A stretch of 64,000 bases of DNA, from contig NW_021833446.1 of NCBI RefSeq assembly GCF_006345805.1, positions 1 to 64,000 on the forward strand, given 5' to 3'. Source of the stretch: Octopus sinensis (Eukaryota). Position numbers and translations under genes: made by a program. Shown here in pieces: positions 13,186 to 60,480 of this stretch (the first letter of the stretch is position 1; each line of letters opens with the position of its first letter). Under the pieces are notes generated by a model, which searched no databases, was not told the DNA's origin, and worked only from the letters and a program-made list of their open reading frames with translations.

Positions 13186-13490
13186 GTTTGCTACTAGAAT
13201 AGTTAAGTGAGAAAACTATTTTTAATGAAACTATTTCATCGAATCCCATCTCAAAATTGCTTTTAATATAGAATTCCGATGAATTATTTCACACACTACA
13301 CATACTACACACACACACACACACACATCACACACACACACATACACATGCACACACACACACGCAAACACACACATACACAGAGACTACATTGGTATTC
13401 GTAACTTATTTACATTTTCCATTCTTAGATACAATAATAGAGCATGCTTTAAAATAATAGGATGGTTTTAGATAAATCTCTCTATTCTAT

Positions 13491-13524
13491 TATCTATCTA
13501 TCTATCTATCTATATATCTATCTA

Positions 13525-13574
<50 letters not shown>

Positions 13575-13576
13575 CA

Positions 13577-13638
<62 letters not shown>

Positions 13639-13678
13639 CCTATCTATCTATCTATATCTATCTATCTATCTATCAATC
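13491..13678 (+). repeat. (TATC)n tract upstream of Tx1 copy 1
   Basis: Direct reading of the sequence. Confidence 0.95.
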
Positions 13679-14991
13679 GATGGTCAGGCGATCCATTTGC
13701 TGTCAACACCCGTTAAAAGGAGGACTGGGTATGCCGTGGTTGATGATGCGCAGACATGCGCTGAGACTGCGACATCTCAGGCTCTTCGTAGACGACGGTG
13801 AATAGGTGTGGTCGCCGTTTGTGAGGCACGCTTTCCCGCAGCTTGTCTCTATGACCGAACTGCAGTCGTGGATCAAAAAGAGGCCGAGGAAGGGCGATTG
13901 GCACCGCGTGTGTCGCGTTGCTCTCAAGCAACTCCGCCGTCCTGGGTCGACCTTGAGTGACTCCATCACAACCAAAGCATTCTATAGGGGATTAGTGGAG
14001 GGGAGGTACGACGACGAGCTCGAGGCGAACCTGGACGTCGACGAGGAATACCTGACCCGCCTGTTCGGGACGACTTTCGGGCCAGGGCCCATGGACAACT
14101 TCCAGAGATCCCTGGCCTGGCAGTGCTACCGAGAAGCGCTACCCGTTCGGGATAAGCTCTACAGACACGGCTCGAGAAACACGGGGCCGACCTGCCCGAG
14201 ATGCGGTCAGAGCGACGAAACCGTTCTGCACGCACTCGTGCAGTGTCCAACAATTTCCGACCTGTGGGCTTATGTCGAACAACTGCTGTCACGCGTGGGA
14301 CGAGTCGGTTTATCAGCTGAGTCTATCGTCAATATTGTCACGCCTCCTTCCTTCAAACGGGAAGGAAGAGCTATTTTCATCATCCTTGTGGCTATGGCGA
14401 AAGAATGTATCTGGTGGACGCGTCTGAAAGGATTGGAGACAAACACTTTCCTCTCTGGTCAATCTCTCATCAACTTCTTCAAGTATCACTTGAAAAGGAA
14501 AGTGAGAGTAGAGAGGCAAGTTTTGTCTAGTGAATGTTTTAAAAAAAAATTGGGTGAATGTAGCAAGAATGGCACGTATGAATGACGAAGCCACCTTGAG
14601 CATAATCCTATGAACCCAGAAATTGAAAACAGAGGGTTACCCACTTGCAAACAAATGTGGTAACATATAACAATATTGACCGAGGTTACCGTGGTCTTTT
14701 TCGTAGGCTTTTCTTCCCACAGATAAAACTTATCTGCTTCCCCCTTTACACCATATATCATAACACTGTGATACACGATCCCTATTGATCGTTTTTTTCC
14801 TCTTCCCCCTTTTTCCTCTTTTTTTCTTCTTTTTTCTTTTCTTTTGTTTCTTTTCCTTTTTTCTCTTTTTTTCTTTTTTCCCTTTTGATCGTAAACCTAC
14901 GCCACTTTCTTTTTTTTTATCCCCCAAAAGAAAAGCTCTACCTTGTAATTTGTCCCATTTGTGTTCAGCCCTGTGTGGCCAATAAAGAAAC

Positions 14992-14992
<1 letters not shown>
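13679..14992 (+). mobile_element. Tx1-group LINE copy 1, 5'-truncated
   Basis: Homologous to the long copy from 39180 onward. Encodes the CCHC knuckle CPRCGQSDETVLHALVQC; extra A-run frameshift near 14525; AATAAA at 14981-14986 then (TATC)n. Confidence 0.95.
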
Positions 14993-15081
<89 letters not shown>

Positions 15082-15100
15082 CTATCTATCAATCTATCTA

Positions 15101-16345
15101 AGCAAGCCCATGCCGTCCACCAGCGCCTCCGTCGTGGGACGCTGGACCGACGGCCCGGTTGAGTTGCTCGGGGTCTGGTTTGGTCCGGACCTCCAAGTGG
15201 AGAAGAACTGGAACGAGATAACGAGTAGGGTGGTCACTCTCGCCCGGCAATGGGCTGAGAGGAAACTGTCCCTAAAAGGTCGAGCGGAGGTGGCGAACAC
15301 GTACATCGCGTCCGTCATCTACTACCGCCTGACCGTCGTACCTTGTCCCGACCCTACCATCACCAAACTACAACGCATCCTCTTTCGCTTCTTGTGGAAA
15401 GGATGCGTCCCGATGGTGAGGCGATCCATTTGCTGTCAATACCCGTTAAAAGGAGGGCTGGGCATGCCGTGGTTGATGATGCGCAGACACGCGCTGAGAC
15501 TGCGACATCTCTGGCTCTATGTAGACGACGGTGAACAGGTGTGGTCGCCGTTTGTGAGGCACGCTTTCCCGCAGCTCGTCTCCATGACCGAACTGCAGTC
15601 GTGGATCAAAAAGAGGCCGAGGAAGGGCGATTGGCACCGCGAGTGTCGCGTTGCTCTCAAGCAACTCTGCCGTCCTGGGTCGACCTTGAGTGACTTCAAC
15701 ACAACCAAAGCATTCTATAGGGGATTAGTGGAGGGGAGGTACGACGACGAGCTCGGGGCGAACCTGGACGTCAACGAGGAGTACCTGACCCGACTGTTCA
15801 GGACGACTTTCGGGCCAGGGCCCATGGACAACTTCCAGAGATCCCTGGCCTGGCAGTGCTACCGAGAAGCGCTACCCGTTCGGGATAAGCTCTACAGACA
15901 CGACTCGAGAAACACGGGGCCGACCTGCCCGAGATGCGGTCAGAGCGACGAAACCGTTCTGCACGCACTCGTGCAGTGTCCAACAATTTCCGACCTGTGG
16001 GCTTATGTCGAACAACTGCTGTCACGTGTGGGACGAGTCGGTTTATCAGCTGAGTCTATCGTCAATATTGTCACGCCTCCTTCCTTCAAACGGGAAGGAA
16101 GAGCTATTTTCGTCATCCTTGTGGCTATGGCGAAAGAATGTATCTGGTGGACGCGTCTGAAAGGATTGGAGACAAACACTTTCCTCTCTGGTCAATCTCT
16201 CATCAACTTCTTCAAGTACCACTTGAAAAGGAAAGTGAGAGTAGAGAGGCAAGTTTTGTCTAGCGAATGTTTTAAAAAAAGATGGGTGAATGTAGCAAGG
16301 ATGGCACGTATGAATGACGAAGCCACCTTGAGCATAATCCTATGA
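15101..16345 (+). pseudogene. Tx1 ORF2 C-terminal 414 codons, uninterrupted (post-RT region plus CCHC zinc knuckle)
   Basis: Part of track ORF 14885..16345 from SKPMP onward; open to the native stop; lacks its start, APE and RT core. Confidence 0.9.
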
Positions 16346-16812
16346 ACCCAGAAATTGAAAACAGAGGGTTACCCACTTCCAAACAAATGTGGTAACATAT
16401 AACAATATTGACCAAGGTTACCGTGGTCTTTTTCGTAGGCTTTTCTTCCCACGGATAAACCTTACTTGCTTTCCCCTTTACACCATATATCATAACACTG
16501 TGATACACGATCCCTATTGATCGTTCTTTTTTTCCTCTTCCCCTTTTTTCCCCTTTTTTCTTCTTTTTTCATTTCTCTTTCCTTTTGTTCCTTTTCCTTT
16601 CCTTTTTTCCTTTTTATTCTTTTTATTTTATTGAATTTTTTATTTTTTTTGTTTTTGTTCTTTTCTTCCCTTTTACGATCCCTCTTGATCGAAAACCTAC
16701 GCAACCCCTTTTTTTTTCTTTTGTTTTTTGTTCTCTTCATCCCCCAAAAGAAAAGCTCTACCTTGTAACTTGTCCCATCTGTGTGCAGCCCTGTGTGGCC
16801 AATAAAGAAACT
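15101..16812 (+). mobile_element. Tx1-group LINE copy 2, 5'-truncated
   Basis: Starts agcaagccc after (TATC)n; AATAAA at 16801-16806, then (TATC)n to about 16980. Confidence 0.95.
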
Positions 16813-16885
16813 TATCTATCTGTCTATCTATCTATCTTTCAATCTATCTGTCTATCTATCTTTCTATCTTTCTGCCTATCTATCA

Positions 16886-16979
<94 letters not shown>

Positions 16980-19783: not shown

Positions 19784-20214
19784 ATATATGCATGTATATT
19801 CTGTATAGATTCTTTAAATATATATTCGATTCGAGAAAGAATCTCTAATAGACGTATAGCGTTAAAAAACACATCAGACGATAATCGTCCAACAGAAGTC
19901 GGTGCCATTGCTCAACCCGAATTTCTGTTGACTGAGCTTCATCAGTAGGAGGTATCTATCCACTGCCACCGTATGCAGAGCGAGAATCAGCTGCGAGGTG
20001 ATGCAGCTAAATAATGGTCGAAATGTCACTGATACCACATTTACCCGGCAGACTGAAAATTAAAAAATTCGTTATATATTTCAATTAATACGGCCTCCGT
20101 CGCTAATAATGTACGCGAACGTGTATAATGTGGAACTTTTTGAAAAAACGTAGTTTTAGGAAAAGTAGTGCTCTACAATGTAATTTTGTTCGAAGAAACG
20201 CAGAATTTATCGTG

Positions 20215-20420
20215 TTCTTTTGTACTCTAGGCACAAGGCCCGAAATTCTCGGGGAGGAGGCCAGTCGATTAGATCGACCCCAGTATGCAACTAGTATTTA
20301 ATTTATTGACTACGAAGAGATAAAAGACAAAGTCGACCTCGGCGGAATTTGAACTCAGAACGTAAAGACAGACGAAATCTCGCTAAGCGTTTCGTCCGGC
20401 GTGCTAACGTTTCTGCCAGC
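20215..20420 (-). mobile_element. SINE family B, tail type B1
   Basis: ctaggcacaaggcccgaaatt...gtcgacctcggcggaatttgaactcagaacgt...ctgccagc. Confidence 0.85.
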
Positions 20421-22524: not shown

Positions 22525-23100
22525 AATATTGGTTTTAAATTTTTGGCACAAGGCTGACAAGTCCGGGTGAAGGAGTAAGTCGATTACATCGACCCCAGTG
22601 CTCAACTGGTACATATATTATAGACCCCCAGAAGATGAGAGGAAAAGTCAATGTCAGCGAAATTCGAACTCAGAACGTAAAGCCAGATGGAGTGCTGCTT
22701 AGCATTTTCTACTCTAGGCACAAGACCCGAAATTTTGGGGGAGGGGGGCAGTCGATTATATCGATCCCAGTACGCAAAAGGTACTTAATTTATTGACCAC
22801 GAAAGGATGAAAGGCAAACTTGACTTCGGCGGAATTTGAACTCAGAACGTAACAGCAGACGAAATACCTATTTCTTTATTACCCACAAGGGGCTAAACAT
22901 AGAAGGGACAAACAAGGACAGACATAGGTATTAAGTCGATTACATCGACCGCAATGCGTAACTGGTACTTAATTTATCGACCCCGAAAGGATGAAAGGTA
23001 AAGTCGACCTCGGCGGAATTTGAACTCACAACGTAACGGCAGACGAAATACCGTAAAGCATTTCGCCCGACGCGCTAACGATTCTGCCAGCTCGCCGCCT
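22525..23100 (-). mobile_element. Three tandem SINE family B units with tails B4, B1 and B2
   Basis: The B core repeats three times; the B2 tail (22870-22917) is homologous to the Tx1 3' end. Confidence 0.85.
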
Positions 23101-23545
23101 TTAGGCTACAGAATATGAAATTAACGAAAGCGTGAATTAAAGAATAGCATATTTTAAACTCTCATTTCAAAGATTTCAACATTGAATGAAATGGAATTAT
23201 ATTTCTGCAATTCTTTGATATTCTACATTAAGTAAATGTTTATTGTTGAGTGAAAGGAGCAATGACTCTGATCCTTTCAATGGGGCCTTCGCGTCTAGCG
23301 GGAGTGAAGGAAGAAATTATCTTCCGATAGGAGGTTTTGTTTGAATGGTACTTTCCGTTAGAGGCTACCTGGGGTCAGGAGGTGGCTCATATAAAGCGTG
23401 GAATCAAGGTAAGAGTATCAGCCAACAGCAGAAACAGTGTTACTCCAACGGACTTCCATACAATTCAGTACAGTAAGCTTCACTCACGAGGCTTTTATCA
23501 CAACATGGTGTGTATGGTAGAAGATACTAACCTAAACTCATACCT

Positions 23546-23905
23546 ATTTCTTTACTACCCACAAGGGGCTAAACACAGAGGGGACCAACAAGGACAGGCA
23601 AACGGTTTAAGTCGATTATATCGACCCCAGTGCGTAACTGGTACTTATTTTATTGACCACGAAAGGATAAAAGGCAAAATCGACCTCGGCGGAATTTGAA
23701 CTCAGAACGTAACAGCAGACGAAATACCTATTTCTTTATTACCCACAAGGGGCTAAACACAGAGGGGACAAACAAGGACAGACATAGGTATTAAGTCGAT
23801 TACATCGACCCCAGTGCGTAACTTTGAACTCAGAACGTAACAGCAGACGAAATACCGCTAAGCATTTCGCCCGGCGTCCTAACGTTTCGGCCAGCTCGCC
23901 GCCTT
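23546..23905 (-). mobile_element. Tandem dimer of SINE family B with B2 tails
   Basis: B2 tails at 23546-23593 and 23730-23777; single head ending near 23905. Confidence 0.85.
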
Positions 23906-25141
23906 CACTAACCTAAAGTCATACACCGTAGACAGGAACCAGAAACAGCTCAGATTGAAAGTGAAATACATAACTACGCGACAAAGACTTCACTGTAGAA
24001 TTCTTCCGTTTGGTTTTGCATACTTTAGCAGAGAATCATATCATTTCCGAGTCTCTTACAGCGAGCAGTAAACATGCATGAGATGAAAAAAAAAGATATT
24101 TCAATATATTGCTAATTTGATGAAGCCTTTCTCTTACTTGGTATCGATACAGAGTTAGCACGATATTAATAAAACGTGATGTTTTACAGAGAATTCTAAT
24201 TCAGTCTCGTAAAAAGTTCCAGAAAGTTACGACAGAGATAACAGCAAAATATGAATTGAGTAACGTCTCCACCCAAACTTTAAATTACATATTACTCTGT
24301 CATATTATTGTATGTGGCATTTCTACGTAGCATTGCTATGCGTTGTGTAGCGATGTAATTAAGAGAAATTAATTGAGAAACGATTAAGAGACTTCAATTA
24401 AAACTTGAAGCCTACAGTGATGCAGATATATATATATAATTCACACACACACACACACACACTCAAACACACACACACACATCTTATAGATATCATATAA
24501 AATCCTGTCTGTCTGTGTATGTGTCTTCTAGGATCTCGGGCATCCTCCATCCGATTGCGCTCAAATTTGATATGTAGATACCGACGGTATGAGGGCGAGT
24601 ATAAATCTTGTAAAAATTACAAAAATCGATTCCAGGTTGTATTCGGTACGATATGTTTATTTATTTTAGTAGTTTTGACTTTAAGAGTCCCTCCTAGTGT
24701 GTGGCATTTATGTGTAATAATGCCCTCTATATAATATAAATAAATATATTTAAGTGAAGAAATTGCCATCAATTTTTTCTGTTATGTGGTTTTTCACGCT
24801 AACTACTTGATAAATTCTTATGAAGATTCTATCTTATTTTTAAATTGTATATATATAATATATATATATATATATAATATATATATATATGTATGTATAC
24901 ACACACACACACACCACACACACATGTATGTATATATAATAAGAAAAAAGAAAACCCTTTGTTGCAGCGCACCTAATTATTGCTGTATATGAGCAAAATA
25001 TAACCTAAATCAAAGTGGAGGGTAGATTTTCGTCGGTCAAGTTCCTTTATCGTGGGAATACAAAATACATATAAAATTCATCGAAATATTAGGTTTCAAG
25101 CGTTCCATTATTACAATCCAAAGGAAAGCAGTAGTACAAAG

Positions 25142-27491: not shown

Positions 27492-27524
<33 letters not shown>

Positions 27525-27841
27525 GTGTATGTGTGTGTGTGTGTGTGCATACATACATATTTCAAATTTACAGAAATCAAAAGACTAGGAACAACAAGCA
27601 GATGTATGAGTTTAACGCTCGGGAAGAATGGAAAAGTCTTTTACGTTTCGTGCCTATGCCCGTCGACAAAAAGGATTAAGAGAAAACTATGCATATATAT
27701 TTGGGTGTTCAAAACATTTGATATCGTTTCACAATCTATTAACTTTGCCTGTTCTTGCTCAAATGATTTCAAATTATCACAGCATGTGTAGAAATAGGTC
27801 AACATTTTATGTTTGATATGTTTATCTTTTCAGGTATAGAA

Positions 27842-35808: not shown

Positions 35809-36262
<454 letters not shown>

Positions 36263-36626
36263 GCAACCAAAGCAGGGAGATACCTGAACCATGAAAGCTC
36301 CATACACGACCAAACAAGCACCAACACCACAAAAACACACACAATGCTATCAGCGATAGACACAAAAGACTCCAAACTAATGGAGTACATCACAGGCTAC
36401 ACAAACATCTGTGAAGATGACTTCAAAACTAACAACCATCCACGCACTACACCACCCAAACATATCAAAATACTACACATCACACAAACACAACACCACA
36501 AACTCAAAGCCCTCTCCCAAATGCTGTAGGGGTTTCCAAAAATATCTGTCCCAAAAACTTTATAGAAACCTCCTCGAAGACACATCAAAGAACGAGGAAG
36601 CCAAAACTTTCGACACAAGTAAGTAA
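36263..36626 (+). pseudogene. Putative ORF1 C-terminal remnant of the Tx1 element
   Basis: Open frames (ATKAGRYL...KALSQML*; ...CRGFQKYL...FDTSK*) directly upstream of ORF2; assigned by position only, no recognised motif. Confidence 0.4.
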
Positions 36627-36676
36627 CCCTCTGTACTTTCCTTTTTGTGTTTCAAAGCACACACCCCAATAGAATC

Positions 36677-39600
36677 ATGGTCAAGATTGGTTGTGTGAAT
36701 GCGCGTGGTTTGGGGTCTCCTTGGAAACAAGGATACCTCCTAAATGACATCAAGTCACATGATTTGGGAATCATAGCCATAAGTGAGACCAGACTCCACG
36801 AGCCACGGGCCCTAAAGTCCATGTTTGGCGGATAGTTTAACATTTATTTCGCTCCCTGTCTGCCGAGGATGGGCGGTAGTGGCACCGCGGTACTTTTTCA
36901 CAAGAGCCTGGATCTCGAAGTCAAGACGATATTCGTAGACCCGGAAGGTAGACTGGTCGTTCTGGATGTCGACGGTAGCAATGGGTGCGCTTTTCGACTC
37001 GTATCAGTCTACGCACCGCCCTTAACAGGTCGGGCGGATTTCTTTCGACGTCTAGAAGTATTCTTGGGAACGTCTCGTCCTTTACTCTTAGTGGGGGATT
37101 GGAATGCTACCTTGGACACGCATGTAGACTACGTGGAAAGAGATAGAAACAGAAGGGGATGCAAATGCCTCAGAGACCTGCTCAGACGATTCCAACTGTC
37201 TGACAGGTACCGACTCGACCACCCAAATGCACCAACGTGGACATGGAGCAACCGCAGTGGGTCGTCGAGATCGTATCTAGATAGGATACTGTGTAGGACA
37301 GTAGACAAGGATAACTTAGGATGTCCACAATTCCACACAGTCAGCTACACGGATCACAAATTGGTGACGTGTACGCTAGACTTAGATAAGGCACATAGAC
37401 AGGGTCCTGGGTACTGGAAACTGAACGCATCTTTCCCGTCCAGACAAGTTTTCAGAGACCGGATTAGCACACTAGTAAAGAGGGCTTTGACGGGAGCCAT
37501 CATTAACAACAAATGGTGGTTTGCCCTCACGAGAGCAGTAAAAGCAGAAGCGATTAGGTACAGCAAAGCACTAGCCATAGATAGAAATAGAGTAGAGGGT
37601 GAGCTAGTTAAGAAGCTAGAAGAGGCAATTAGAAGCGGCATCGCATCCGACGTTTTGGCGGCGAGGTTGGCCCTCGACCAACACTTCAACGCCAAACACG
37701 AAGGATGTGCTGTCAGAGCTAGGATACGTGCTCTAAGGAACGAAGGTGTTGGAGCCGCGAGAGAGGCCCGGGTGGAGAGGCGCAACAGGGCAACAAAGCC
37801 ACCATTCGGTCACTGGTAGATGAACAGGGGCGCGAATTGCTCGAGCCAAGTAAAATGTGTGAGGCCTTTCAGCAGCATTTTGCCCGACTGTTCGGGACGA
37901 GTGGAGGGCAAGAACGTAGGGTGGACTTCAGTGCCTACCTACATAGCCTGCCACGACTCTCGACAAGAAAGGCAGGGTGCTGCGAATGGTGCCATCATGG
38001 CGCGGAAGTGCAGGAAGCGATAGCAGAATGCTCGAGGGACAAATCACCGGGTTTGGATGGTCTACCCTACGAGCTTTACAATTGTATGCCAGACTTGTTT
38101 GGAGACGTCTTGGCAGCGGTATACTGCAACTGGCAGCAAAACGGGAGCATTCCCGGTTTTGTGAGTCGAGGAGCTGTAACTCTGCTAAAGAAAGATCCAA
38201 ACAAGGGAAACATTATAGATAACTTTAGACCAATCACGCTGCTCAATGCAGACCTGAAAATTTTGACAAAGGTGTTAGCCAAGAGGTTGGCGCTTGTCAT
38301 CGAGAAACTGGTCGACAACGCACAAACGTGCGCCGTGCCGGGCCGGAGCATCCATGACAACCTCCATCTGATGCGCTACATCATAGACAGGGTAGTTAAC
38401 GAACCTGGCATGGGTGGGGCCCTGATCAACTTGGATCAATCGAAAGCCTTTGATAGGGTAGACCATCGATACTTGGAGGCAGTCCTGAGAGCGGCTGGTT
38501 TCGGTCCCGTCTTCCGCGGCTGGATAGCTGCCTTGTACAGAGGCATCCGTTCGGTAATTCGCGCGTAAATGGACATCTATCGAGACCTTTCGACATTGCA
38601 CGTTCGGTCCGTCAGGGATGTCCCCTCTCGGCGCTTCTATACGTATTGACTCTTGAGCCACTACTGCGGAAGCTGGCGACTCTAAGGGGCATCCCGCGAG
38701 AATTGGGATGCGGGACGAGCGTGTCTGCATACGCGGACGACGTCACCGTCATAGTGTCAAGCCACGAGCACATCGAGCGGGTCGGCGAGACACTGAAAGA
38801 CTACGAAGCGGTGACAGGAGCAAAAATCAACCGGGAAAAGTCAGTGGGCTTGCGGCTCGGCACCTGGAGAAGCAAGCCCATGCCGTCCACCAGCGCCTCC
38901 GTCGTGGGACGCTGGACAGACGGCCCGGTCGAGTTGCTCGGGGTTTGGTTCGGTCCGGACCTCCAATGGAGAAAACTGGAACGAGATAACGAGTAGGGTG
39001 GTCACTCTCGCCCAGCAATGGGCCGAGAGGAAACTGTCCCTAAAAGGTCGGGCGGAGGTGGTGAACGCGTACATCGCGTCCATCATCTACTACCGCCTGA
39101 CCGTCGTACCTTGTCCCGACCCTACCATCACCAAACTAGAACGCATCCTCTTCCGCTTCTTGTGGAAAGGATGCGTCCCGATGGTCAGGCGATCCATTTG
39201 CTGTCAACACCCGTTAAAAGGAGGGCTGGGCATGCCGTGGTTGATGATGCGCAGACACGCGCTGAGACTGCGACATCTCCGGCTCTGTGTAGACGACGGT
39301 GAACAGGTGTGGTCGCCGTTTGTGAGGCACGCATTCCCGCAACTCGTCTCCATGACCGAACTACAGTCGTGGATCAAAAAGAGGCCGAGGAAGGGCGATT
39401 GGCACCGCGAGTGTCGCGTTGCTCTCAAGCAACTCTGTCGTCCCGGGTCGACCTTAAGTGACTTCAACACAACCAAAGCATTCTATAGGGGATTAGTGGA
39501 GGGGAGGTACGACGACGAGCTCGGGGCAAACCTGGGCGTCGACGAGGAATACCTGACCCGCCTGTTTCAAACGACTTTCGGCCCGGGACCTATGGACAAC

Positions 39601-40111
39601 TTCCAGAGATCCCTGGCCTGGCGGTGCTACCGAGAAGCGCTACCCGTTCGGGATAAGCTCTATAGGCATGGCTCGAGAAACACGGGGCCGACCTGCCCGA
39701 GATGCGGTCAGAGCGACGAAACCGCTCTGCACGCAATCGTGCAGTGTCCAGCAATTCCCACCTGTGGGCTTATGTCGAACGACTGCTGTCACGTGTGGGA
39801 CGTGTCGGTTTATCAGCCGAGTCTATCGTTAATATCGTCACGCCTCCTTCCTTCAAACGGGAAGGAAGAGCTATTTTTATCATACTTGTGGCTATGGCGA
39901 AAGAATGTATCAGGTGGACGCGCCTGAAAGGATTAGAGACAAACACTTTCCTCTCTGGTCAATCTCTCATCAACTTCTTCAAGTATCACTTGAAGAGGAA
40001 AGTGAGAGTAGAGAGGCAAGTTTTGTCTAGTGAATGTTTTAAAAAAGATGGGTGAATGTAGCAAGGATGGTACGTATGAATGACGAAGCCACCTTGACTA
40101 TGATTCTATGA
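36677..40111 (+). pseudogene. Tx1 ORF2 (APE endonuclease, RT, CCHC) with premature stop and frameshifts
   Basis: MVKIGCVNARGL, ISETR, VSVYAP, VGDWN, YLDRIL, TDHKLV, GPGYWKLNAS, FRPITLLNAD, LDQSKAFDRVDH, VRQGCPLS, YADD (38730-38741), CPRC-x8-H-x4-C. Stop at 36833; frameshifts near 37775, 38565, 38966, 39750 and 40045. Confidence 0.92.
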
Positions 40112-40480
40112 ACATAAAATTAATACAGAGAGTTGCTTATTTGCAAAAAAAAAGAAATATAATATGTGACTTCATTGACCGAGGTTACCGTGGTCTTTTC
40201 CGTAGGCTTTTCTTTCCACGGGTAAACCTCACCTGTTCTCCACTTTACACTTCATATTGACATTTCTGTGATAACGATCCCTATTGATCAATTTTTTTGC
40301 TCTCCCCCCACCTTTTTTTTTTTTATTAACCCCTACCTTTTTTTTTTAGTCCTCTTTCTTTCCTTTTACGATCCCTTTTGATCGAAAACCACCACTCCCT
40401 TTTTTTTACCCCCAAAAGAAAAGCTCTACCTTGTAATTTGTTCTATCTGTGTGCAGCCCTGTGTGGCTAATAAAGAAACA

Positions 40481-40704
<224 letters not shown>

Positions 40705-40707
40705 CAT

Positions 40708-41660
40708 CTGGGGCATGCCGTGGTTGATGATGCGCAGACAGGACGACTTTCGGGCCAGGGCCCATGGACAACTTCCAGAGATCCCTGGCCTGGCAGTGCT
40801 ACCGAGAAGCGCTACCCGTTCGGGATAAGCTCTACAGACACGGCTCGAGAAACACGGGGCCGACCTGCCCGAGATGCGGTCAGAGCGACGAAACCGTTCT
40901 GCACGCACTCGTGCAGTGTCCAACAATTTCCGACCTGTGGGCTTGTGTCGAACAACTGCTGTCACGTGTGGGACGAGTCGGTTTATCAGCTGAGTCTATC
41001 GTTAATATTGTCACGCCTCCCTCCTTCAAACGGGAAGGAAGAGCTATTTTTATCATCCTTGTGGCTATGGCGAAAGAATGTATCTGGTGGACGCGTCTGA
41101 AAGGATTGGAGACAAACACTTTCCTCTCTGGTCAATCTCTCATCAACTTCTTCAAGTACTACTTGAAAAGGAAAGTGAGAGTAGAGAGGCAAGTTTTGTC
41201 TAGCGAATGTTTTAAAAAAAGATGGGTGAATGTAGCAAGAATGGCACGTATGAATGACGAAGCCACCTTGAGCATGATCCTATGAACCCAGAAATTGAAA
41301 ACAGAGAGTTGCTTATTTGCAAAAAAAAAAAAAAAAAGAAATATAACATGTGACTCCATTGACCGAGGTTACCGTGGTCTTTTCCGTAGGCTTTTCTTTC
41401 CACGGTTAACCTCACCTGTCCCCCCTTACACTTCATATTGACATTTCTGTGATAACGATCCCTATTGATCAATTTTTTTTTTCCCTCTCCCCCTTTTTTT
41501 TTAACCCCCCTCTTTTTTGTCCTCTTTCTCTCCCTTTACGATCCCTTTTGATCGAAACTCCCCCTTCCTTTTTTTTTTTTTTTTTAAACCTTCAAAAGAA
41601 AAGCTCTACCTTGTAATTTGTTCTATCTGTGTGCAGCCCTGTGTGGCTAATAAAGAAACA
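40708..41660 (+). mobile_element. Tx1-group LINE copy 4, 5'-truncated with an internal 311 nt deletion
   Basis: 33 nt (40708-40740) joined via CA microhomology to sequence 311 nt further on (relative to copy 2); AATAAA at 41649-41654 then (TATC)/(TCCA)n. Confidence 0.95.
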
Positions 41661-41788
41661 TATCTATCTATCCATCTATCTATCCATCTATCCATCTATC
41701 TATCCATCTATCTATCCATCTATCTGTCTATCTATCTATCTACTTGTTTGTCTATCCATCTATCTATCCATCTATCTATCTATCTATA

Positions 41789-41822
<34 letters not shown>

Positions 41823-42446
41823 CCTCTCTCTCTCTGTCTGTATGTCTGTCTGTCTTTCTCTTTCCTCCTGTCAGTCTTTCTCTCTGCCTATCTGTTCTAT
41901 TTAATCCAAATCGTAACCGCTCCCTCTTACGCTACTGTTTTCCTGATGGCTGTTTAATCCAGTTTTCAACTCCTGTTATTTTTTCTTCTAAAAAAGAAGA
42001 AATCTACAGCGTTTTTGAAACTGTGAAAACTATTTTCTTTGTGCAACTCATCTTGATTCGAGGAGTGAATTCAGATTGTCGCTGAGAATTGAAAATATTC
42101 ACATATAATATCACAGCAAGGAGTATAACAGCTAATACAAGTACATATCTGCAAACCGTGTATGTTCAGTTAAAATCAAATACTTGTGACGGGAAGCAGG
42201 GAGCTGAAATGGATGCTAGAATTAGATGCTAGAATTTCAGGTGCTGGGACAATAATGTAGCAGCTCCTGCATTCGATCTTCAATTCGGTTTTCATGCTCA
42301 TCCTCTGTAATTCTCATCAATTTTGGTTAATGACCAAAAGGGTATGATCACGTATACTAAAGGCCAAGATAGGGGTCTTCTGAATGACCTCCGGAGTAAT
42401 GTTACTCGACGAGGTTGCGTAGCTCGAAGGTCAGGGCGCCTCGCCT

Positions 42447-46782: not shown

Positions 46783-46960
46783 CCTTTCTGCTAAAGGCAC
46801 AAGGCCTGAAATTTGGCGGAAGTGGGGAGACTAGTCGATTATATTGACTCCAATGTTTCACTGGTTCTTAATTTATCGTCCCCGAAAGGATGAAAGGAAA
46901 AGTCTACCTCGACAGAATTTGAACTCAGAACGTACATGCGAACGAAATGCCGCTAAGCCA
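46783..46960 (-). mobile_element. SINE family B, tail B1
   Basis: cctttctgctaaaggcacaaggcctgaaatt...gaatttgaactcagaacgt. Confidence 0.85.
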
Positions 46961-52122: not shown

Positions 52123-55100
52123 ATGCTAACATCAAACTTCCCTTACCTCGACATTCCTGTTAAATGTACGTAGCATCAACCCATCAATTATTGCCCAAAA
52201 ATGGAAGATCCCATATATATAGAGTTGGCTTGCCGAAACGGCACATTGCTTCCCTTTCTTTATCCTTACCGAGACTCACCTGAACAGCACCCATATGGAC
52301 GCCGAGGTGAAAATAAAAGATTTCACCATTGTTCGTGCAGATCAATAAGGGAGGGACAGCCATCTTTATCCATGACTCCTTTTCATTTGATGCCAAGGAC
52401 ATATTTTCCAATGGCTACTGTGAATCTGTGTCACTATTCAGCAAGGCCAAGGACATAATCATTGTTGGTCTTTACAGGCCTCCCCAAGCACCTCTAAAGT
52501 GCTTTGAAGAGTGCCTTAGCAATGTCAAGTCCTTCCTTCGGAAGTACAACTCCGGAAACATACTAGTGATGGGTGATTTCAACCTCCCTCATGTGAACTG
52601 GCCCACAAATACTCTGAAGTTAGGCAAATGTTCTACATCAGATAGAGCAGCAGCAGAACTGCTCTTTAATCTAATGGATGAATACTTCCTGACTCAGCTA
52701 GTGCTCGAACCAACGAGACAGAATAAAACGATCTTGGGTCTGGTATTGACCAATCACTCTAGCTTCGTTCACAGTATTTCAGTTGAAAAAACTCTCCTCT
52801 CAGACCACGACATGGTACTCTGCAATTTTAATTCCCGACATATAAAAACCAAACCAGCCAATCCCACTCCATGGCACCCATTTGACAACATAAACTTCCA
52901 CAAAGCGGACTGGGGAGCAATCAGAAAGGATCTGTCTTTCATCGACTGGTCTTTTACTCTCAATTCCACCCATATTGAGACCGCATGGCAGCACTTTGAA
53001 AAGATTGTCACCTATACATGCTCTAAACACACTCCCACGAAATCTACTTACACAAACAGAAACCGGCTCCCTAAAAAGAAAAAAAAACACTCATCAGGCG
53101 AATCAAAAGACTCAACAAAAAAAAAATCAACCAATTAAAATATTCCCACATACAACATCCACATTCAACAACAATGAAAAGGCTAGAGCTGGAAAAACTT
53201 CATCTGCAGACCGACATGAAAACCTCCATTGAAAATCAAAGAACAGTGGGTAATCAAAAACATCAAACAGAACCCAAAAGTGTTCTATTCTTATGCAAAT
53301 AAGCATAGAACCACTGTCTCACCCATTGGGCCATTGATTGATGATAACGGCATTCCCCAACACGATGCTAAAGAAATGGCAGACATACTGCAGAAACAAT
53401 ACTGCTCTGTCTTTAGTGTTCCCACTGATATTGACGTAAGAGAAGCGAACGAAGTTGACTCCCAACATAAAATCTCAGACATAACCTTCACTGCCACTGA
53501 CATCATAGCAGCAATAAATGAGGTCAAATACTACTCTGCTGTAGGACCTAATAGATTCCCCGCTAGTCTCCTGAAGGAATGTAGACACCAACTTGCAGTC
53601 CCTCTGACTAACTTCTGGAGAAATTCGTTAGACGCAGGTTATATACCGAAACAGTTTCTATCCCAGTCAGTCATCCCGGTTTTCAAACAGGGAAACAGAT
53701 CCCTCGCAGTCAACTATCGCCCAATCTCACTCACCTCCCACATCATTAAAGTGTTTGAAAGAGTGTTAAGATCAAGGATAGCTGACTTCCTGGAGACCCA
53801 CAAACTTCTAAATGCAAATCAGCATGGCTTTCGCTGTGGCAGGGACTGTCTGATACAGCTCTTACACCACATTGAAGATGTACTCAAAGCCTTGGGAACA
53901 GGTTCGAACTCTGATGTCATATATCTTGACTTCAGTAAAGCGTTCGACAGGGTAGACCATAATATCCTACTCTCAAAATTGGAAAATGTTGGAATCCGTG
54001 GAAAAGTTCTACACTGGATACAGTATTTCCTGGCGAATAGAACACAACATGTTGTAGTTGATGGAGTCCACTCAAGCCCAGCAAAAGTCACCAGCAGTGT
54101 ACCCCAGGGGACTGTCTTGGGTCCGCTACTCTTCATAATTTACATAAATGACCTTTCCAGTGTCGTACATTACTGCAAAGTGAAAATATTTGCTGATGAC
54201 ACTAAGCTCCAGCAAATCGTCAATGAAGAAGCAGACCGAACTCAACTCCAGTCTGATCTATATGCTGTGAGTCAATGGGCAGACAGAAACAAAATGCAAC
54301 TGAACGAGGGAAAATTTGAGCTGATGCATTTTGGAAGAAATTCCTCACTAAAACAGCCATACTCTCTTCCTTCAGGGGAACCGCTCACAGCCTCTAACAA
54401 TATCAGAGACCTGGGTGTAATTGTTGATGACGATCTCAGTTGGAGTGCACACATCAACAAGAATGTCGATATAGCTCGTAGGATGAGTTCCTGAATCTTA
54501 AGAACTTTCCGGTCCAGAGAACAAGGTGTCATCATACCACTTTTCTCCTCCTTTGTACGGACACACCTCGAATACTGCTGCCCACTGTGGTCTCCCCATA
54601 TAAGACAAAACATCTCGAGGATTGAATCAACCCAGAGGGCACTCACTAAACGAATTGAAGGCATGGCTGCTCTCGATTATTGGGATCGCCTTAACGCCTT
54701 GAAACTCTACTCTCTCCAGCGTCGCCGTGAGCGGTACATCATTTGTACGATGTGGAGAATATACCGCCAACTTTGCCCAAACGACCTGAACATTAGCTTC
54801 AAGGTTCATCCAAGACGTATATATATATATACGTCCCATGCCAATTCAAGATCACAGCATACATGTACACTGCAACATAATTTCTTTTCCTCAACAGGCC
54901 CTGCCCTATTTAACATTGTCCTATTTAACAGGATCCCATCAACTTTAAACGGAGTCTCTTTTACTCTTTTACTCTTTTACTTGTTTCAGTCATTTGACTG
55001 CGGCCATGCTGGAGCACCGCCTTTAATCGAGCAACTCGACCCCGGGACTTATTCTTTTGTAAGCCCAGTACTTATTATATCGGTTTCTTTTGCCGAACCG

Positions 55101-55459
55101 CTAGGTAACGGGGACATAAACACACCAGCATCGGTTGTCATGCAATGCTAGGGGGACAAACACAGACACACAAACACACACACGCATATATATACATATA
55201 TACGACGGGCTTCTTTCAGTTTCCGTCTATCAAATCCACTCACAAGGCTTTGGTCGGCCCGAGGCTATAGTAGAAGACACTTGCCCAAGGTGCCACGCAG
55301 TGGGAATGAACCCGGGACCATGTGGTTGGTAAACAAGCTACTTACCACACAGCCACTCTGGATAGATTCTTTCAAGGAATACCAGATGAGCCACCCATAA
55401 TTGGATACAACTCACCCAACAAAAACTCACTACTTGAATGGACCATAAACAAAACTTGA
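52123..55459 (+). pseudogene. CR1 ORF2 (APE + RT), disrupted
   Basis: LNVRS, LTETHL, GGTAIF, GLYRPP, MGDFNLP, SDHDMV, NYRPISLTS, QHGFR, LDFSKAFDRVDH, VPQGTVLGP, FADD (54189-54200), LEYCCPLWSP, LDRFFQGIPDEP. TGA at 54492, frameshifts, SINE insertion. Confidence 0.9.
54956..55357 (-). mobile_element. SINE family A, full length, nested antisense in CR1 ORF2
   Basis: Complete A head and tail; CR1 coding sequence resumes at 55358. Confidence 0.9.
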
Positions 55460-55555
55460 CTTAAACAGGATTCAAATAATCCTATCAGGTGGTGCTATTA
55501 AGTTAGACATGGCCTGGACCAATCTTTGATCGAAACATATCTAAGATTATCTAAG

Positions 55556-55593
<38 letters not shown>

Positions 55594-58249: not shown

Positions 58250-58470
58250 AATCCTTTCTACTAAAGGCACAAGGCCTGAAATTCTTGGGGGAGGGGGACT
58301 AGTTAATTACATCGACCCCAGTGCTCAACTGATACTTATTTCAACGACACCGGAAAGATAAAAGGCGAAGTCAACCTCGGTGGAATTTGAACTCAGAACG
58401 TAAAGACGGACGAAATGCGACTTAACATTGTGTCCAGGGTGCTAACGATTCTGCCAGCTCGCCGCTTTAT
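58250..58470 (-). mobile_element. SINE family B, tail B1
   Basis: aatcctttctactaaaggcacaaggcc...ctgccagctcgccgc. Confidence 0.85.
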
Positions 58471-59274: not shown

Positions 59275-60480
59275 GAATCCTTTCTACTGAAGGCACAAGG
59301 CTTGAAATTTGGGGAAGGAGACTTGTCGATTACATCGACTCCAGTCTTTCGCCGGCTCTCAATTTATCGATCCGGAGGGGGAAAAGCAAAGTCGACCTCG
59401 GCAGAATTTGAACTCAGAACGTAGCGACGAGCGAAATGTCGCTAAACATTTCCTCCAGCGTGCTAACGATTCTGCCAGCTCATTGCTTTATTCATCATAA
59501 TGATGATAATTTCCTTTATTGGCCACAAGGGGCCAAGACATGAAAGACAATATTAAAGGACGGTACTCATTTTATCGACTTCCAACGCCAAAAAGCATAG
59601 TCGACCTTGCCGGAATATGAACTCGGGACGTAAAACAATATTAACAATAACAATGGTTTCAAATTTTGCCACAAGGACAGCAAGTTTGGGGGAGGGAATG
59701 AATCGATTACATCGACTCCAGTCTTCAACTGGTACTCATTTTATCGACCCCGGAAGAAGGAAAGGTAAAGCCGACCTAGGCGGAATTTAAACTCAGAACG
59801 TTAAGACGGGCAAAATACGCAAGTATTTCGTCCAGCGTGTTAACGATTCTGTCAGTTCGTCGCCTTGACAACATTAATAATAATGATGATAATTTCCTTT
59901 ATTGACCACAAGGGCCCAAAACTTGAAAAACTATATCAAAGGATGGTGCACATTTTATCGGCTACGAATGATAAAAGGCAAGGTCGACCTTGGCGGAATT
60001 TGAACTCGGAACGTAAAGCAATATTCTTTTCTACTTAAGCACAATGCCCGAAATTTTGGGGGAAGAGCCAGTCGATTAGATCGACCCCGGTACGCAACTG
60101 ATACTTAATTTATCGACCCCGAAAGGACTAAGGCAAAGTCGACCTTGGCGGTATTTGAACTCGGAACGTAAAGCAATAATAATAATGATTGCAAGTGTGT
60201 TGAAAATAAATTTACGTATCTTGATATTGATTATCACTGCTTCGTGTTCGCCTAAACGAAAATAATAAGAGTTCTTTCTAATTTTGGCACAAGGCCAGCA
60301 ATTTCGGGGAGAGTGGGTCAGTCAGTTATACCGACCCCATTATTTGACCGGTACGCTATTTCATCAACCTCGAAAGGAAGAAACGCAAAGTTGGCGATGG
60401 CGGAATTTGAACTCAGAGCGTATAGGGTCGGGACAAATTCTCTATGGTTATTTCTAACAATTCTCTAAGGAGAATTGTTG
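59275..60480 (-). mobile_element. Cluster of six tandem SINE family B units with mixed tails
   Basis: The gtcgacc..ggcggaatttgaactc core repeats six times; tails B1, B3, B4, B3, B1-like, B4. Confidence 0.85.

What the first reader, a model, noticed from the sequence alone, without database searches (positions are those of the whole stretch)
22870..23777. A tRNA-headed SINE carries the 3' end of the Tx1 LINE: candidate SINE-Tx1 partnership
Read on the minus strand, the B2 tail (22870-22917, 23546-23593, 23730-23777) is ccttgtt-tgtcccctct-gtgtttagcc-ccttgtgggt-aataaagaaa-t. The Tx1 terminus (16761-16811) is ccttgtaact-tgtcccatct-gtgtgcagcc-ctgtgtggcc-aataaagaaa-c. The last 40 nt align ungapped at 33/40 by hand count, with ccttgt shared upstream. 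A second tail type (B3, 59514-59527) shares an exact 14-mer, tgtggccaataaag, with Tx1 copies 1 and 2. SINEs are known to borrow the 3' tail of the LINE that mobilises them (CR1, L2, RTE), but the best-studied L1-clade partner SINEs rely on poly(A), so a sequence-specific Tx1-derived tail would be unusual. Inference: these SINEs use this Tx1 family or a sister family.
Basis: partly seen in the sequence, partly recalled or inferred. Interest (0 to 1): 0.85.

Follow-up and report, generated by a model that had tools for sequence, protein, structure and literature searches.

The report
Octopod SINEs borrow L1/Tx1-like LINE tail
Short parasitic repeats (SINEs) in this octopus-type genome end in the same roughly 50-base, hairpin-containing sequence as a neighbouring L1/Tx1-like LINE, which points to the LINE group that copies these very abundant SINEs; no such tail sharing with an L1-group LINE in animals turned up in the papers I could search.

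Summary
The three B2 tails and the LINE 3' ends lie at the stated coordinates.

A profile built only from six LINE 3' ends (four in the window, one from Argonauta hians, one from a metagenome contig) finds every B2, B3 and Argonauta SINE tail and nothing unrelated. Pairing is lineage-specific:
- B3 fits a sister LINE that ends in (ATT)n.
- Argonauta SINEs fit the Argonauta LINE.
- B2 fits the window LINE and the Argonauta LINE about equally, so its exact partner was probably not sampled.

The tails share a 4-bp GC hairpin with a CUUGU loop that shows compensatory changes, and a YTAT junction that extends into the target-site duplications.

The LINE has APE, RT and zf-RVT domains. Its best solved relative is human L1 ORF2p, and it sits inside (TATC)n arrays. 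"Tx1" is inferred, not tested by phylogeny. The tRNA head is not confirmed by Rfam or ARAGORN.

More weakly, the majority "type-1" SINE tail matches the 3' ends of more distant LINEs of the same clade.

This is a new variant of the known SINE/LINE shared-tail principle.

The parts
23730..23904 (-). SINE copy A: head, internally deleted body, B2 tail at 23730-23777. It is the left unit of a two-unit composite.
23546..23728 (-). SINE copy B: starts at SINE position ~49, B2 tail at 23546-23593. It is the terminal unit of the composite A+B.
23907..23924 (-). Upstream target-site duplication of composite A+B (gtatgactttaggttagt).
   Evidence: read directly; 17/18 identical to 23526-23543
23526..23543 (-). 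Downstream target-site duplication of composite A+B (gtatgagtttaggttagt).
22870..23100 (-). SINE copy C: full length, B2 tail at 22870-22917. A 5'-truncated SINE unit with a type-1 tail (22750-22868) follows it directly.
59510..59640 (-). B3 unit 1: SINE body from position ~62, with B3 tail ...cttggccccttgtggccaataaaggaaa and then ttatcatcattat.
59893..60023 (-). B3 unit 2.
13679..14991 (+). LINE copy a: 5'-truncated 3' part with zf-RVT; terminal tail at 14941-14991.
15101..16811 (+). LINE copy b: 5'-truncated; terminal tail at 16761-16811.
36263..40479 (+). LINE copy c, the longest copy: APE at 36869-37819, RT at 37837-38568 and continuing after frameshifts, zf-RVT at 38998-39927, 3' UTR, tail at 40429-40479. 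It has no ORF1 and its frames are disrupted.
40711..41659 (+). LINE copy d: 5'-truncated; tail at 41609-41659.
13476..13678 (+). (TATC)n array abutting the 5' end of LINE copy a.
14993..15100 (+). (TATC)n array between LINE copies a and b.
16813..16979 (+). (TATC)n array after LINE copy b.
35820..36262 (+). (TATC)n array abutting the 5' end of LINE copy c.
40481..40709 (+). (TATC)n array between LINE copies c and d.
41661..41833 (+). (TATC)n array after LINE copy d.
58257..58298 (-). Type-1 SINE tail (...cccctcccccaagaatttcaggccttgtgcctttagtagaaagga). It is one of eight such tails; the others are 60280-60318, 20204-20260, 22717-22749, 22541-22575, 46791-46829, 59280-59321 and 59659-59696. All eight are hit by a profile made from the 3' ends of the more distant LINE group.

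Best explanation
The B2 and B3 SINE tails are the 3'-terminal module, about 50-60 nt, of a cephalopod clade of L1-group LINEs. These LINEs carry APE, RT and a C-terminal zinc-binding domain and are most likely Tx1-type.

Proposed mechanism:
1. The SINE RNA is presumably a Pol III transcript made from A-box-like and B-box-like motifs in its head.
2. It ends in the LINE's own terminal stem-loop: a 4-bp GC stem closing a CUUGU loop, flanked by UCUGUGU ... AAUAAAGA.
3. The ORF2 protein of the matching LINE subfamily recognises this tail in trans, in the 'stringent' manner.
4. The endonuclease nicks at a YTAT-type site: CTAT in Argonauta, TTATC or ATATC in the window.
5. The last bases of the RNA can anneal to the nicked site, and target-primed reverse transcription follows. 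The results are 5'-truncated copies, 13-18 bp target-site duplications, and repeated insertion at the junction left by an earlier copy (tandem units).

Different SINE subfamilies carry tails of different LINE sublineages. B3 matches an (ATT)n-ended sister LINE. The Argonauta SINEs match the Argonauta LINE. B2 probably matches an unsampled sister of the window's (TATC)n-embedded LINE.

Shown: tail homology, terminal position in both elements, lineage-specific pairing, the hairpin with compensatory changes, target-site duplications, and the shared junction.

Inferred: Pol III transcription, recognition in trans by ORF2p, annealing at the target, and membership of the Tx1 clade.
For: - Tail identity is far above background within the window.
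- A profile made from LINE ends only finds B2 at E = 1e-9 to 5e-7, B3 at 4e-7 and 1e-4, and Argonauta SINE tails at 2e-6 to 7e-3 in 140 kb. The one further hit at E < 0.01 (L001 12250-12282) lies next to the Argonauta LINE and is read as another LINE tail; one ArgS2 tail scores only E = 0.29.
- In both elements the module is at the very 3' end. In the LINE it is followed by (TATC)n, (ATT)n or ctat; in the SINE it is followed by the target-site duplication.
- Between the window LINE and the Argonauta LINE the 3' UTR cannot be aligned, except for the terminal 33 nt at 91% identity, or 60 nt at 77%. This indicates selective constraint on the terminus.
- Pairing is specific: B3 against the L003 LINE scores 26-27/31 and E = 9e-8, but only E = 0.035 against the window LINE; Argonauta SINEs score 23-28/31 against the Argonauta LINE and 18-23/31 against the window LINE.
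- Hairpin: 89.7% of cells are paired, against 69.5 +/- 2.9% in shuffles (0 of 500 reach the observed value) and 16-45% when the pairing is slid. One pair is C-G in 16 sequences and G-C in 11. The same three-tier fold appears in most single-sequence predictions.
- The junction after the tail is YTAT in 15 of 22 elements. Target-site duplications begin with CTAT or TAT in Argonauta, and one SINE inserted exactly at the 3' junction of another.
- The LINE is L1-group: human L1 ORF2p scores E = 1.5e-35, R2 scores 2e-17. Domains are APE + RVT_1 + zf-RVT. A related LINE has an ORF1 with a CCHC knuckle.
- Similar ages: LINE copies are 86-95% identical to each other and B2 copies 89-94%.
Against: - The window LINE copies all lie in (TATC)n arrays, while the B2 and B3 copies do not. 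If the endonuclease dictates the target, this particular LINE family is not the driver of the copies seen here.
- B2 matches the window LINE no better than it matches the Argonauta LINE.
- The sample is small: three B2 and two B3 copies, LINE copies at only two independent loci (neighbouring copies are 93-95% alike), and a single 22-kb Argonauta locus.
- The hairpin covariation rests largely on one split between two tail groups, so shared ancestry may inflate it.
- Folding energies are not better than shuffled sequence.
- The Tx1 assignment was not tested phylogenetically.
- Neither Rfam nor ARAGORN detects a tRNA in the SINE head.
- There is no functional evidence of trans-mobilisation.
Confidence: 0.72

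Rival explanations
1. The tail is shared by descent, but the SINE copies seen here were mobilised by a different LINE clade (for example RTE, CR1 or Dong/R4, all recently active in octopus), or through a tail further downstream in composite units. On this view the B2 module is a relic or an internal linker.
For: Two of the three B2 tails are internal: a further SINE unit follows them directly, and copy C's composite ends in a type-1 tail. B2 and B3 copies are not in (TATC)n, unlike the window LINE. RTE, CR1 and Dong-R4 families are reported as recently active in Octopus vulgaris (PMC13282606; PMC9115989).
Against: Copy B ends in a B2 tail followed at once by an 18-bp target-site duplication, so the tail was terminal at insertion. 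In Argonauta all sampled SINE copies end in the LINE-like tail followed by target-site duplications. Tail variants co-vary with the LINE of the same lineage. The one LINE of another type in the window (52329-~55560) has an unrelated 3' end.
Confidence: 0.13
2. The partnership is real, but the LINE is not a member of the Tx1 clade in the strict sense. It would be another deep L1-group lineage of lophotrochozoans.
For: No reference Tx1 or L1 sequences could be brought into a tree. The representative-protein search and cluster look-up returned no named Tx1 relatives. The only anchor is human L1 ORF2p.
Against: Mollusc L1-group LINEs are classified as L1-Tx1 or Tx1 in repeat surveys, and Tx1 rather than L1 appears among the LINE clades named for molluscs (PMC10294476, PMC13282606, PMC8967140). 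Insertion into a microsatellite and head-to-tail arrays are typical of Tx1 families such as Kibi and Koshi (PMC4494074). An ORF1 with a CCHC knuckle is described as consistent with Tx1 (PMC5203782).
Confidence: 0.2
3. The B2 and B3 'tails' are not part of the SINEs. They would be very short, 5'-truncated LINE insertions that happen to lie next to SINE bodies.
For: LINEs of this clade insert next to earlier insertions, and strongly truncated copies exist: 0.9-1.7 kb in the window, and the Argonauta LINE is followed by what looks like a second, shorter copy of its 3' end.
Against: The junction between SINE body and tail is the same in all three B2 copies (...gtaatcgacttaatacc...), in both B3 copies, and in six Argonauta copies. 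Independent truncated insertions would not do this.
Confidence: 0.03
4. The similarity is chance or due to low-complexity sequence.
For: The tail is short and contains the common AATAAA motif.
Against: No other 40-mer in the window exceeds 25/40, against 31-32/40 for the LINE ends. Profile E-values go down to 1e-9. The match recurs in a second genus.
Confidence: 0.01

Closest known systems
Stringent-type SINE/LINE pairs, e.g. eel UnaSINE1/UnaL2 (Kajikawa and Okada 2002, as cited in PMC4494074 and PMC3472496)
   Same: The SINE and the LINE share the last tens of nucleotides. The tail contains a conserved stem-loop. A short terminal repeat or junction motif is shared. The rest of the LINE 3' UTR is not conserved.
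   Different: The partner here belongs to the L1 group, not to L2, CR1 or RTE. No functional test exists. The terminal repeat differs between sublineages: (TATC)n, (ATT)n or a single CTAT.
L1-clade pairs with shared tails in plants and a green alga: ZmSINE2/3 with LINE1-1_ZM, and SINEX-3_CR with L1-1_CR (Ohshima 2012, PMC3472496; PMC3747384)
   Same: An L1-group LINE has a conserved 3' end that forms a hairpin with compensatory changes, and SINEs share it. Both cases argue for stringent recognition within the L1 group.
   Different: Those pairs are in plants and algae and end in poly(A). [quoted passage not shown] The present elements are from a cephalopod, lack poly(A), and are associated with microsatellites.
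SINEU with Tx1-Mar in crocodilians (Kojima 2015, PMC4494074)
   Same: A SINE is proposed to be mobilised by Tx1-type LINEs. Insertion sites are shared between SINE and LINE, and insertions lie next to earlier copies.
   Different: SINEU has snRNA-derived heads and poly(A) tails. No LINE sharing its 3' sequence was found, and the link rests on a shared target (Mariner-N4_AMi) and shared U1/U2-derived 5' heads. Here the link rests on a shared 3' sequence plus a short junction motif.
Microsatellite-specific Tx1 families: Kibi (TC)n, Koshi (TTC)n, and crocodilian (TTCC)n/(TTTC)n families (Kojima and Fujiwara 2004, as cited in PMC4494074)
   Same: The window LINE copies lie inside a tetranucleotide microsatellite in one orientation, with the repeat on both sides and copies arranged head to tail.
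   Different: The repeat is (TATC)n. The Argonauta relative has only CTAT after its end, and the L003 relative ends in (ATT)n. It is not settled whether the repeat is a target, an RNA-templated tail, or both.
Octopus tRNA-derived SINEs OK, OR1 and OR2 (Ohshima and Okada 1994; cited in PMC4824008 and PMC4758252)
   Same: These are abundant octopus SINEs described as tRNA-derived, some with CORE-type bodies.
   Different: None of the papers I could read gives a LINE partner for them.

Membership tests
SINE (non-autonomous retroposon mobilised by a LINE) | Short, non-coding, multi-copy element with a defined 5' end and 3' end | tested here: met
   About 20 copies or fragments of a ~230-nt unit in 64 kb. 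Related copies occur in Argonauta.
SINE (non-autonomous retroposon mobilised by a LINE) | Head derived from a small RNA gene with an internal Pol III promoter (tRNA, A and B boxes) | tested here: inconclusive
   Rfam finds no match at E <= 1. ARAGORN finds none in the window, and only implausible intron-containing calls at very lax settings. By eye, tggcagaatcg resembles box A and gttcaaattcc resembles box B.
SINE (non-autonomous retroposon mobilised by a LINE) | Flanking target-site duplications | tested here: met
   The B2 composite A+B has an 18-bp duplication with 17/18 matching. Argonauta copies have 13-15 bp duplications.
Stringent-type SINE/LINE pair (shared 3' tail) | Significant sequence similarity confined to the 3' termini of both elements | tested here: met
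   terminal position shown
Stringent-type SINE/LINE pair (shared 3' tail) | Conserved stem-loop in the tail, supported by compensatory changes | tested here: met
   4-bp stem with CUUGU loop: 89.7% of cells paired against 69.5% in shuffles, 0 of 500 reaching the observed value; 16 cells changed on both sides. Caveats: few independent events, and folding energies are not exceptional.
Stringent-type SINE/LINE pair (shared 3' tail) | SINE and LINE in the same genome with overlapping periods of activity | tested here: inconclusive
   Copy-to-copy identity is similar (LINE 86-95%, B2 89-94%), but the numbers are small and no genome-wide age profile is available.
Stringent-type SINE/LINE pair (shared 3' tail) | Same insertion-site signature or terminal repeat in SINE and LINE | tested here: inconclusive
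   Met in Argonauta, where both are followed by CTAT, and for B3 and LINE copies a and b, all followed by TTATC. Not met for B2, which is followed by AGGTAT. No SINE copy lies in a (TATC)n array.
Stringent-type SINE/LINE pair (shared 3' tail) | Tail-dependent mobilisation in trans by the LINE protein | not testable with these tools
   Needs a retrotransposition assay.
Tx1 clade of non-LTR retrotransposons | RT-domain phylogeny placing the element with Tx1 reference elements | not testable with these tools
   No reference Tx1 sequences were available. The best solved relative is human L1 ORF2p (E = 1.5e-35, against 2e-17 for R2). The look-up of ten representative homologues returned no Tx1-named protein.
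Tx1 clade of non-LTR retrotransposons | APE-type endonuclease N-terminal to the RT, and a C-terminal cysteine-rich domain | tested here: met
   Exo_endo_phos, RVT_1 and zf-RVT, in that order, in copy c.
Tx1 clade of non-LTR retrotransposons | Target-specific insertion | tested here: met
   All four window copies lie in (TATC)n in one orientation, with the repeat also at the 5' side and no LINE tail upstream of it. This represents only two independent loci. The Argonauta copy is not in a microsatellite.
Tx1 clade of non-LTR retrotransposons | ORF1 of the RRM and/or CCHC-knuckle type rather than the mammalian L1 type | tested here: inconclusive
   The window copies lack ORF1. A related LINE (L002, 53% RT identity) has an ORF1 with zf-CCHC at E = 4e-5.

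The most novel reading that the evidence does not exclude
One cephalopod clade of L1/Tx1-like LINEs, using stringent recognition of a small 3' stem-loop, drives essentially all of the very large octopod SINE amplification. Each SINE tail class (type-1, B2, B3) would be the tail of a different sublineage of that clade. The same machinery would prefer to insert at its own YTAT or microsatellite junction, which would explain the tandem and chimeric SINE and LINE units. As far as the papers I could search show, this would be the first stringent, sequence-specific SINE partnership of an L1-group LINE in animals.
Probability: 0.35. Interest if true: 0.75.

Novelty: new variant of a known kind. Interest (0 to 1): 0.6.

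Why it matters
SINEs make up roughly a tenth of octopus genomes, and almost all recently active SINE families in Octopus vulgaris are listed as unclassified (PMC13282606). The papers I could search name no LINE that copies them.

A shared, structured 3' tail points to a specific LINE clade as the driver. That makes the question testable, both with genome-wide consensus comparisons and with a tail-swap retrotransposition assay.

It also bears on a general question. L1-group LINEs are the textbook 'relaxed', poly(A)-dependent retrotransposons, and only three SINEs with L1-clade tails were known in 2012, all from plants or a green alga (PMC3472496). An animal case, on the Tx1 side of the group, would support the idea that stringent 3' recognition is ancestral in the L1 group and was lost repeatedly.

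Tried and rejected
1. Pattern scan of metagenome contigs for the tail.
2. Naming the LINE clade through homologue names. The top 120 word-index hits are unnamed cephalopod proteins. The representative search plus a cluster look-up gave no Tx1-named relative.
3. Confirming the tRNA origin of the SINE head with Rfam and ARAGORN. Both were negative.
4. Testing whether type-1 tails belong to the same tail module as B2, B3 and the window LINE. A profile of those 22 tails does not detect type-1 tails (E ~ 8), and blastn-short of type-1 tails against the first three loci gave only chance-level seeds. Only a separate profile, built from more distant LINE ends, detects them.
5. Supplementary files of PMC9115989, PMC13282606 and PMC3531059, searched for consensus sequences or classifications. 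Nothing usable.
6. Full-text search for the tail and body sequences. Only unrelated primer matches.
7. Exact look-up of a window ORF to identify the source record. Not on record.
8. The third LINE in the window (52329-~55560) as an alternative partner. Its 3' end is unrelated.
Full report
**What is in the window**

The finding's region on the minus strand holds three copies of a ~230-nt SINE:
- C: 22870-23100
- B: 23546-23728
- A: 23730-23904

Each ends in the 'B2' tail ...ccttgtttgtcccctctgtgtttagccccttgtgggtaataaagaaat. In all, the window carries about 20 copies or fragments of this SINE. They share a body (...gttctgagttcaaattccgccgaggtcgac...ggggtcgataaattaagtaccagt...ggggtcgatgtaatcgac) and fall into three tail classes joined just after ...atcgac:
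- a majority 'type-1' tail (...cccctcccccaaaatttcaggccttgtgcctttagtagaaagga, usually followed by ATT-type repeats)
- B2, three copies
- B3, two copies: 59510-59564 and 59893-59947

On the plus strand there are four 3' parts of one LINE family:
- a: 13679-14991
- b: 15101-16811
- c: 36263-40479
- d: 40711-41659

Each ends in ...ccttgtaa(c/t)ttgt(c/t)c(c/t)at(c/t)tgtgt(g/t)cagccctgtgtggc(c/t)aataaagaaac. A (TATC)n array follows immediately.

**Check of the observation**

The coordinates and the quoted sequences are correct. Ungapped identity over the last 40 nt is 30-32/40, not 33/40. When the B2 tail is compared with every 40-mer of the window on both strands, nothing except the B2 copies and the four LINE ends exceeds 25/40. 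blastn of a whole B2 SINE against the window finds the four LINE ends at E = 6e-6 to 3e-4. The 14-mer shared by B3 and LINE copies a and b is exact.

**What the LINE is**

Copy c carries Exo_endo_phos (APE), RVT_1 and zf-RVT in that order, with stop codons and frameshifts, and has no ORF1. A stitched RT segment matches human L1 ORF2p best among solved structures (E = 1.5e-35 over 398 residues). R2 proteins follow at 2e-17. The LINE therefore belongs to the L1 group.

Its closest relatives are cephalopod proteins:
- Argonauta hians, 69% identity
- two contigs from JGI metagenomes, 76-78%
- a cuttlefish and several ENA assemblies, about 50%

The window therefore comes from an octopod-type genome. 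The species was not determined.

The (TATC)n array also abuts the 5' ends of copies a and c, and no LINE tail lies upstream of those arrays. The LINE therefore sits inside pre-existing (TATC)n, in one orientation, and head to tail. Neighbouring copies are 93-95% identical and copies at different loci 86-90%, so these are two independent loci rather than four.

Target-specific insertion, including insertion into microsatellites, is a hallmark of Tx1-clade elements (PMC4494074). Mollusc L1-group LINEs are annotated as L1-Tx1 or Tx1 (PMC10294476, PMC13282606, PMC8967140). A related LINE (L002) has an ORF1 with a CCHC knuckle, a feature described as consistent with Tx1 (PMC5203782). I could not place the RT in a tree with reference Tx1 and L1 elements, and attempts to find named relatives failed. 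'Tx1' is a reasonable inference, not a tested result.

**Evidence from other genomes**

The locus encoding the Argonauta homologue (L001, 22 kb) was decisive. The LINE there ends in ...ttctgtgtcggcccttgtggctaataaagaaatctat. At least eleven SINE-like copies of two kinds in the same 22 kb end in ...tccttctgtgttcggcccttgtggctaatagagaaatctat or a close variant. Six of them have a body related to the window SINE.

Between the window LINE and the Argonauta LINE the coding region aligns at 68%. The several hundred bases of 3' UTR do not align at all, yet the terminal 33 nt are 91% identical, or 60 nt at 77%. That is the pattern expected for a functionally constrained terminus.

A third relative (L003, 76% aa identity) ends in ...gtccttaatgtttccgggcccttgtggccaataaaagaaatc(ATT)n.

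A profile built only from the six LINE ends was scanned over 140 kb (the window plus six loci). It found:
- all three B2 tails, E = 1e-9 to 5e-7
- both B3 tails, E = 4e-7 and 1e-4
- the Argonauta SINE tails, E = 2e-6 to 7e-3 (one ArgS2 tail reached only E = 0.29)

Below E = 0.01 it found one further site, L001 12250-12282, next to the Argonauta LINE; I read it as another LINE tail. The match does not disappear in consensus; it sharpens.

Pairing is lineage-specific:
- B3 matches the L003 LINE: 26-27/31, 41-42/55, blastn E = 9e-8 and 7e-7. This is much better than its match to the window LINE (E = 0.035).
- Argonauta SINEs match the Argonauta LINE (23-28/31) better than the window LINE (18-23/31).
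- B2 matches the window LINE and the Argonauta LINE about equally (38-39/55 against 37/55).

The exact B2 partner is therefore probably an unsampled sister subfamily.

**Structure and junctions**

All tails contain GGCC-CUUGU-GGCY or a variant of it. On an alignment of 29 distinct tails (LINE and SINE, both tail groups) the 4-bp stem is formed in 89.7% of cells. Shuffled pairings give 69.5 +/- 2.9%, with 0 of 500 reaching the observed value, and slid pairings give 16-45%. One pair is C-G in 16 sequences and G-C in 11. B2 carries a C-G where the others have G-C at the next pair.

Single-sequence folds mostly extend this into a three-tier hairpin, pairing UCUGUGU with AAUAAAGA. Energies are unremarkable for such short AU-rich RNA, and the covariation rests on few independent events. 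I therefore treat the hairpin as likely rather than proven.

The bases directly after the tail are YTAT in 15 of 22 elements:
- LINE copies a and b: TTATC
- LINE copies c and d: ATATC
- B3: TTATC
- Argonauta LINE and SINEs: CTAT

In Argonauta the target-site duplications begin with that CTAT or TAT (13-15 bp). One SINE inserted exactly at the 3' junction of its neighbour. The B2 composite A+B has an 18-bp duplication, 23907-23924 and 23526-23543, matching at 17/18.

These features fit target-primed reverse transcription. The nick would fall at a short YTAT-type site to which the last bases of the RNA can anneal. That would also explain the head-to-tail LINE pairs, the 7.5-kb-period LINE array in L002 and the tandem SINE units.

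**Extension to the majority SINE tail (weaker)**

More distant LINEs of the same clade are 51-55% identical to the window RT. They are L002, L006 and L007 from ENA assemblies and L004 from the cuttlefish Acanthosepion pharaonis. Near their 3' ends they carry ...ccctcccccatttttcggccttgtgccaaatttttctcatt or variants.

A profile built only from these LINE ends, scanned over the window, gives eight top hits, and all eight are type-1 SINE tails in the correct orientation. E-values are 7e-4 to 0.05 and scores 9.2-15.2 bits. The best scores in 20 shuffled windows are 1.0-8.6 bits.

Individually these hits are marginal. Collectively they suggest that the majority tail also derives from this LINE clade. 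The stem pair that is C-G in the B2/B3/window-LINE group is G-C in this group.

**Comparison with what is known**

Shared SINE/LINE tails are a classical finding. [quoted passage not shown]

The only published SINE-Tx1 link I found is SINEU with Tx1-Mar in crocodilians. It rests on shared insertion targets and shared U1/U2-derived 5' heads. Those SINEs have poly(A) tails, and no LINE sharing their 3' sequence was found (PMC4494074).

Recent octopus repeat annotations list 13 recently active L1-Tx1 families. They leave 893 of 900 recently active SINE families unclassified and name no partner (PMC13282606). Work on active octopus LINEs has concentrated on RTE and Dong (PMC9115989).

Within the literature available to me, a sequence-specific tail shared between octopod SINEs and an L1/Tx1-like LINE is not described. 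Repbase, Dfam and SINEBase entries could not be consulted, and one of them may already note it.

**Verdict**

1. The Tx1 label is inferred.
2. The tRNA head is unconfirmed.
3. The neighbouring (TATC)n-embedded LINE family is probably a relative of the true drivers rather than the driver itself.
4. Mobilisation itself is inferred by analogy with stringent-type pairs.

I rate this as a new variant of a known kind, of moderate to good interest to transposon biologists and to those studying cephalopod genome expansion.

Noticed in passing
window 13476-16979 and 35820-41833: LINE copies lie head to tail in pairs inside long (TATC)n arrays, with the repeat on both sides. Neighbouring copies are 93-95% identical and copies at different loci 86-90%. 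A (TATC)n-associated L1/Tx1-like family may itself be a new target type alongside Kibi (TC)n and Koshi (TTC)n. A short (TATC)7 array at 27494-27525 is unoccupied.
   Followed up: partly
window 22750-22868, 23546-23728; also 3055, 4647, 22687, 59633, 60016, 60171, 60422: SINE units repeatedly begin at the same internal positions. Two begin at ~49 (ggtatttcg), directly after a B2 tail. Seven begin at ~58-66 (ctttacgttctgag). The result is dimers and chimeras whose right-hand units carry a different tail class. This suggests propagating composite SINEs, or template switching at a fixed stop in the tRNA-like head.
   Followed up: partly
window 52329-55560 (+), with an insert at 54950-55362: A third LINE of another type (Exo_endo_phos_2 + RVT_1) has an unrelated 3' end. 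It is interrupted by an inverted repeat of a different SINE-like family, which has a clearer tRNA-like head and ends in (CTCTTTTA)n.
   Followed up: no
L002 (ENA ERZ26052130 contig), whole locus: A related LINE forms a tandem array with a 7,547-bp period at 94.7% identity. It carries two ORF1-like genes (one with a CCHC knuckle), APE and RT, with no obvious spacer between units.
   Followed up: partly
L001 218, 1952, 5125, 13886, 14235 (Argonauta hians): A second family of short repeats with a different body (...tccatttatctgcccttgtttg...) ends in the same LINE-like tail. Several non-autonomous families therefore use this tail in Argonauta.
   Followed up: no
L001 2948-3050 (Argonauta SINE copy ending at 2803): Between the upstream target-site duplication and the SINE 5' end lie extra bases, atgggggggggg, that are not part of either. 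This may be non-templated addition at the 5' junction.
   Followed up: no
window 14941-14991 and the other tails: The LINE tail contains a canonical AATAAA hexamer about 6 nt from its end. The Argonauta SINE tails have AATAGA at that position. The hexamer is therefore not what is conserved in the SINEs.
   Followed up: no
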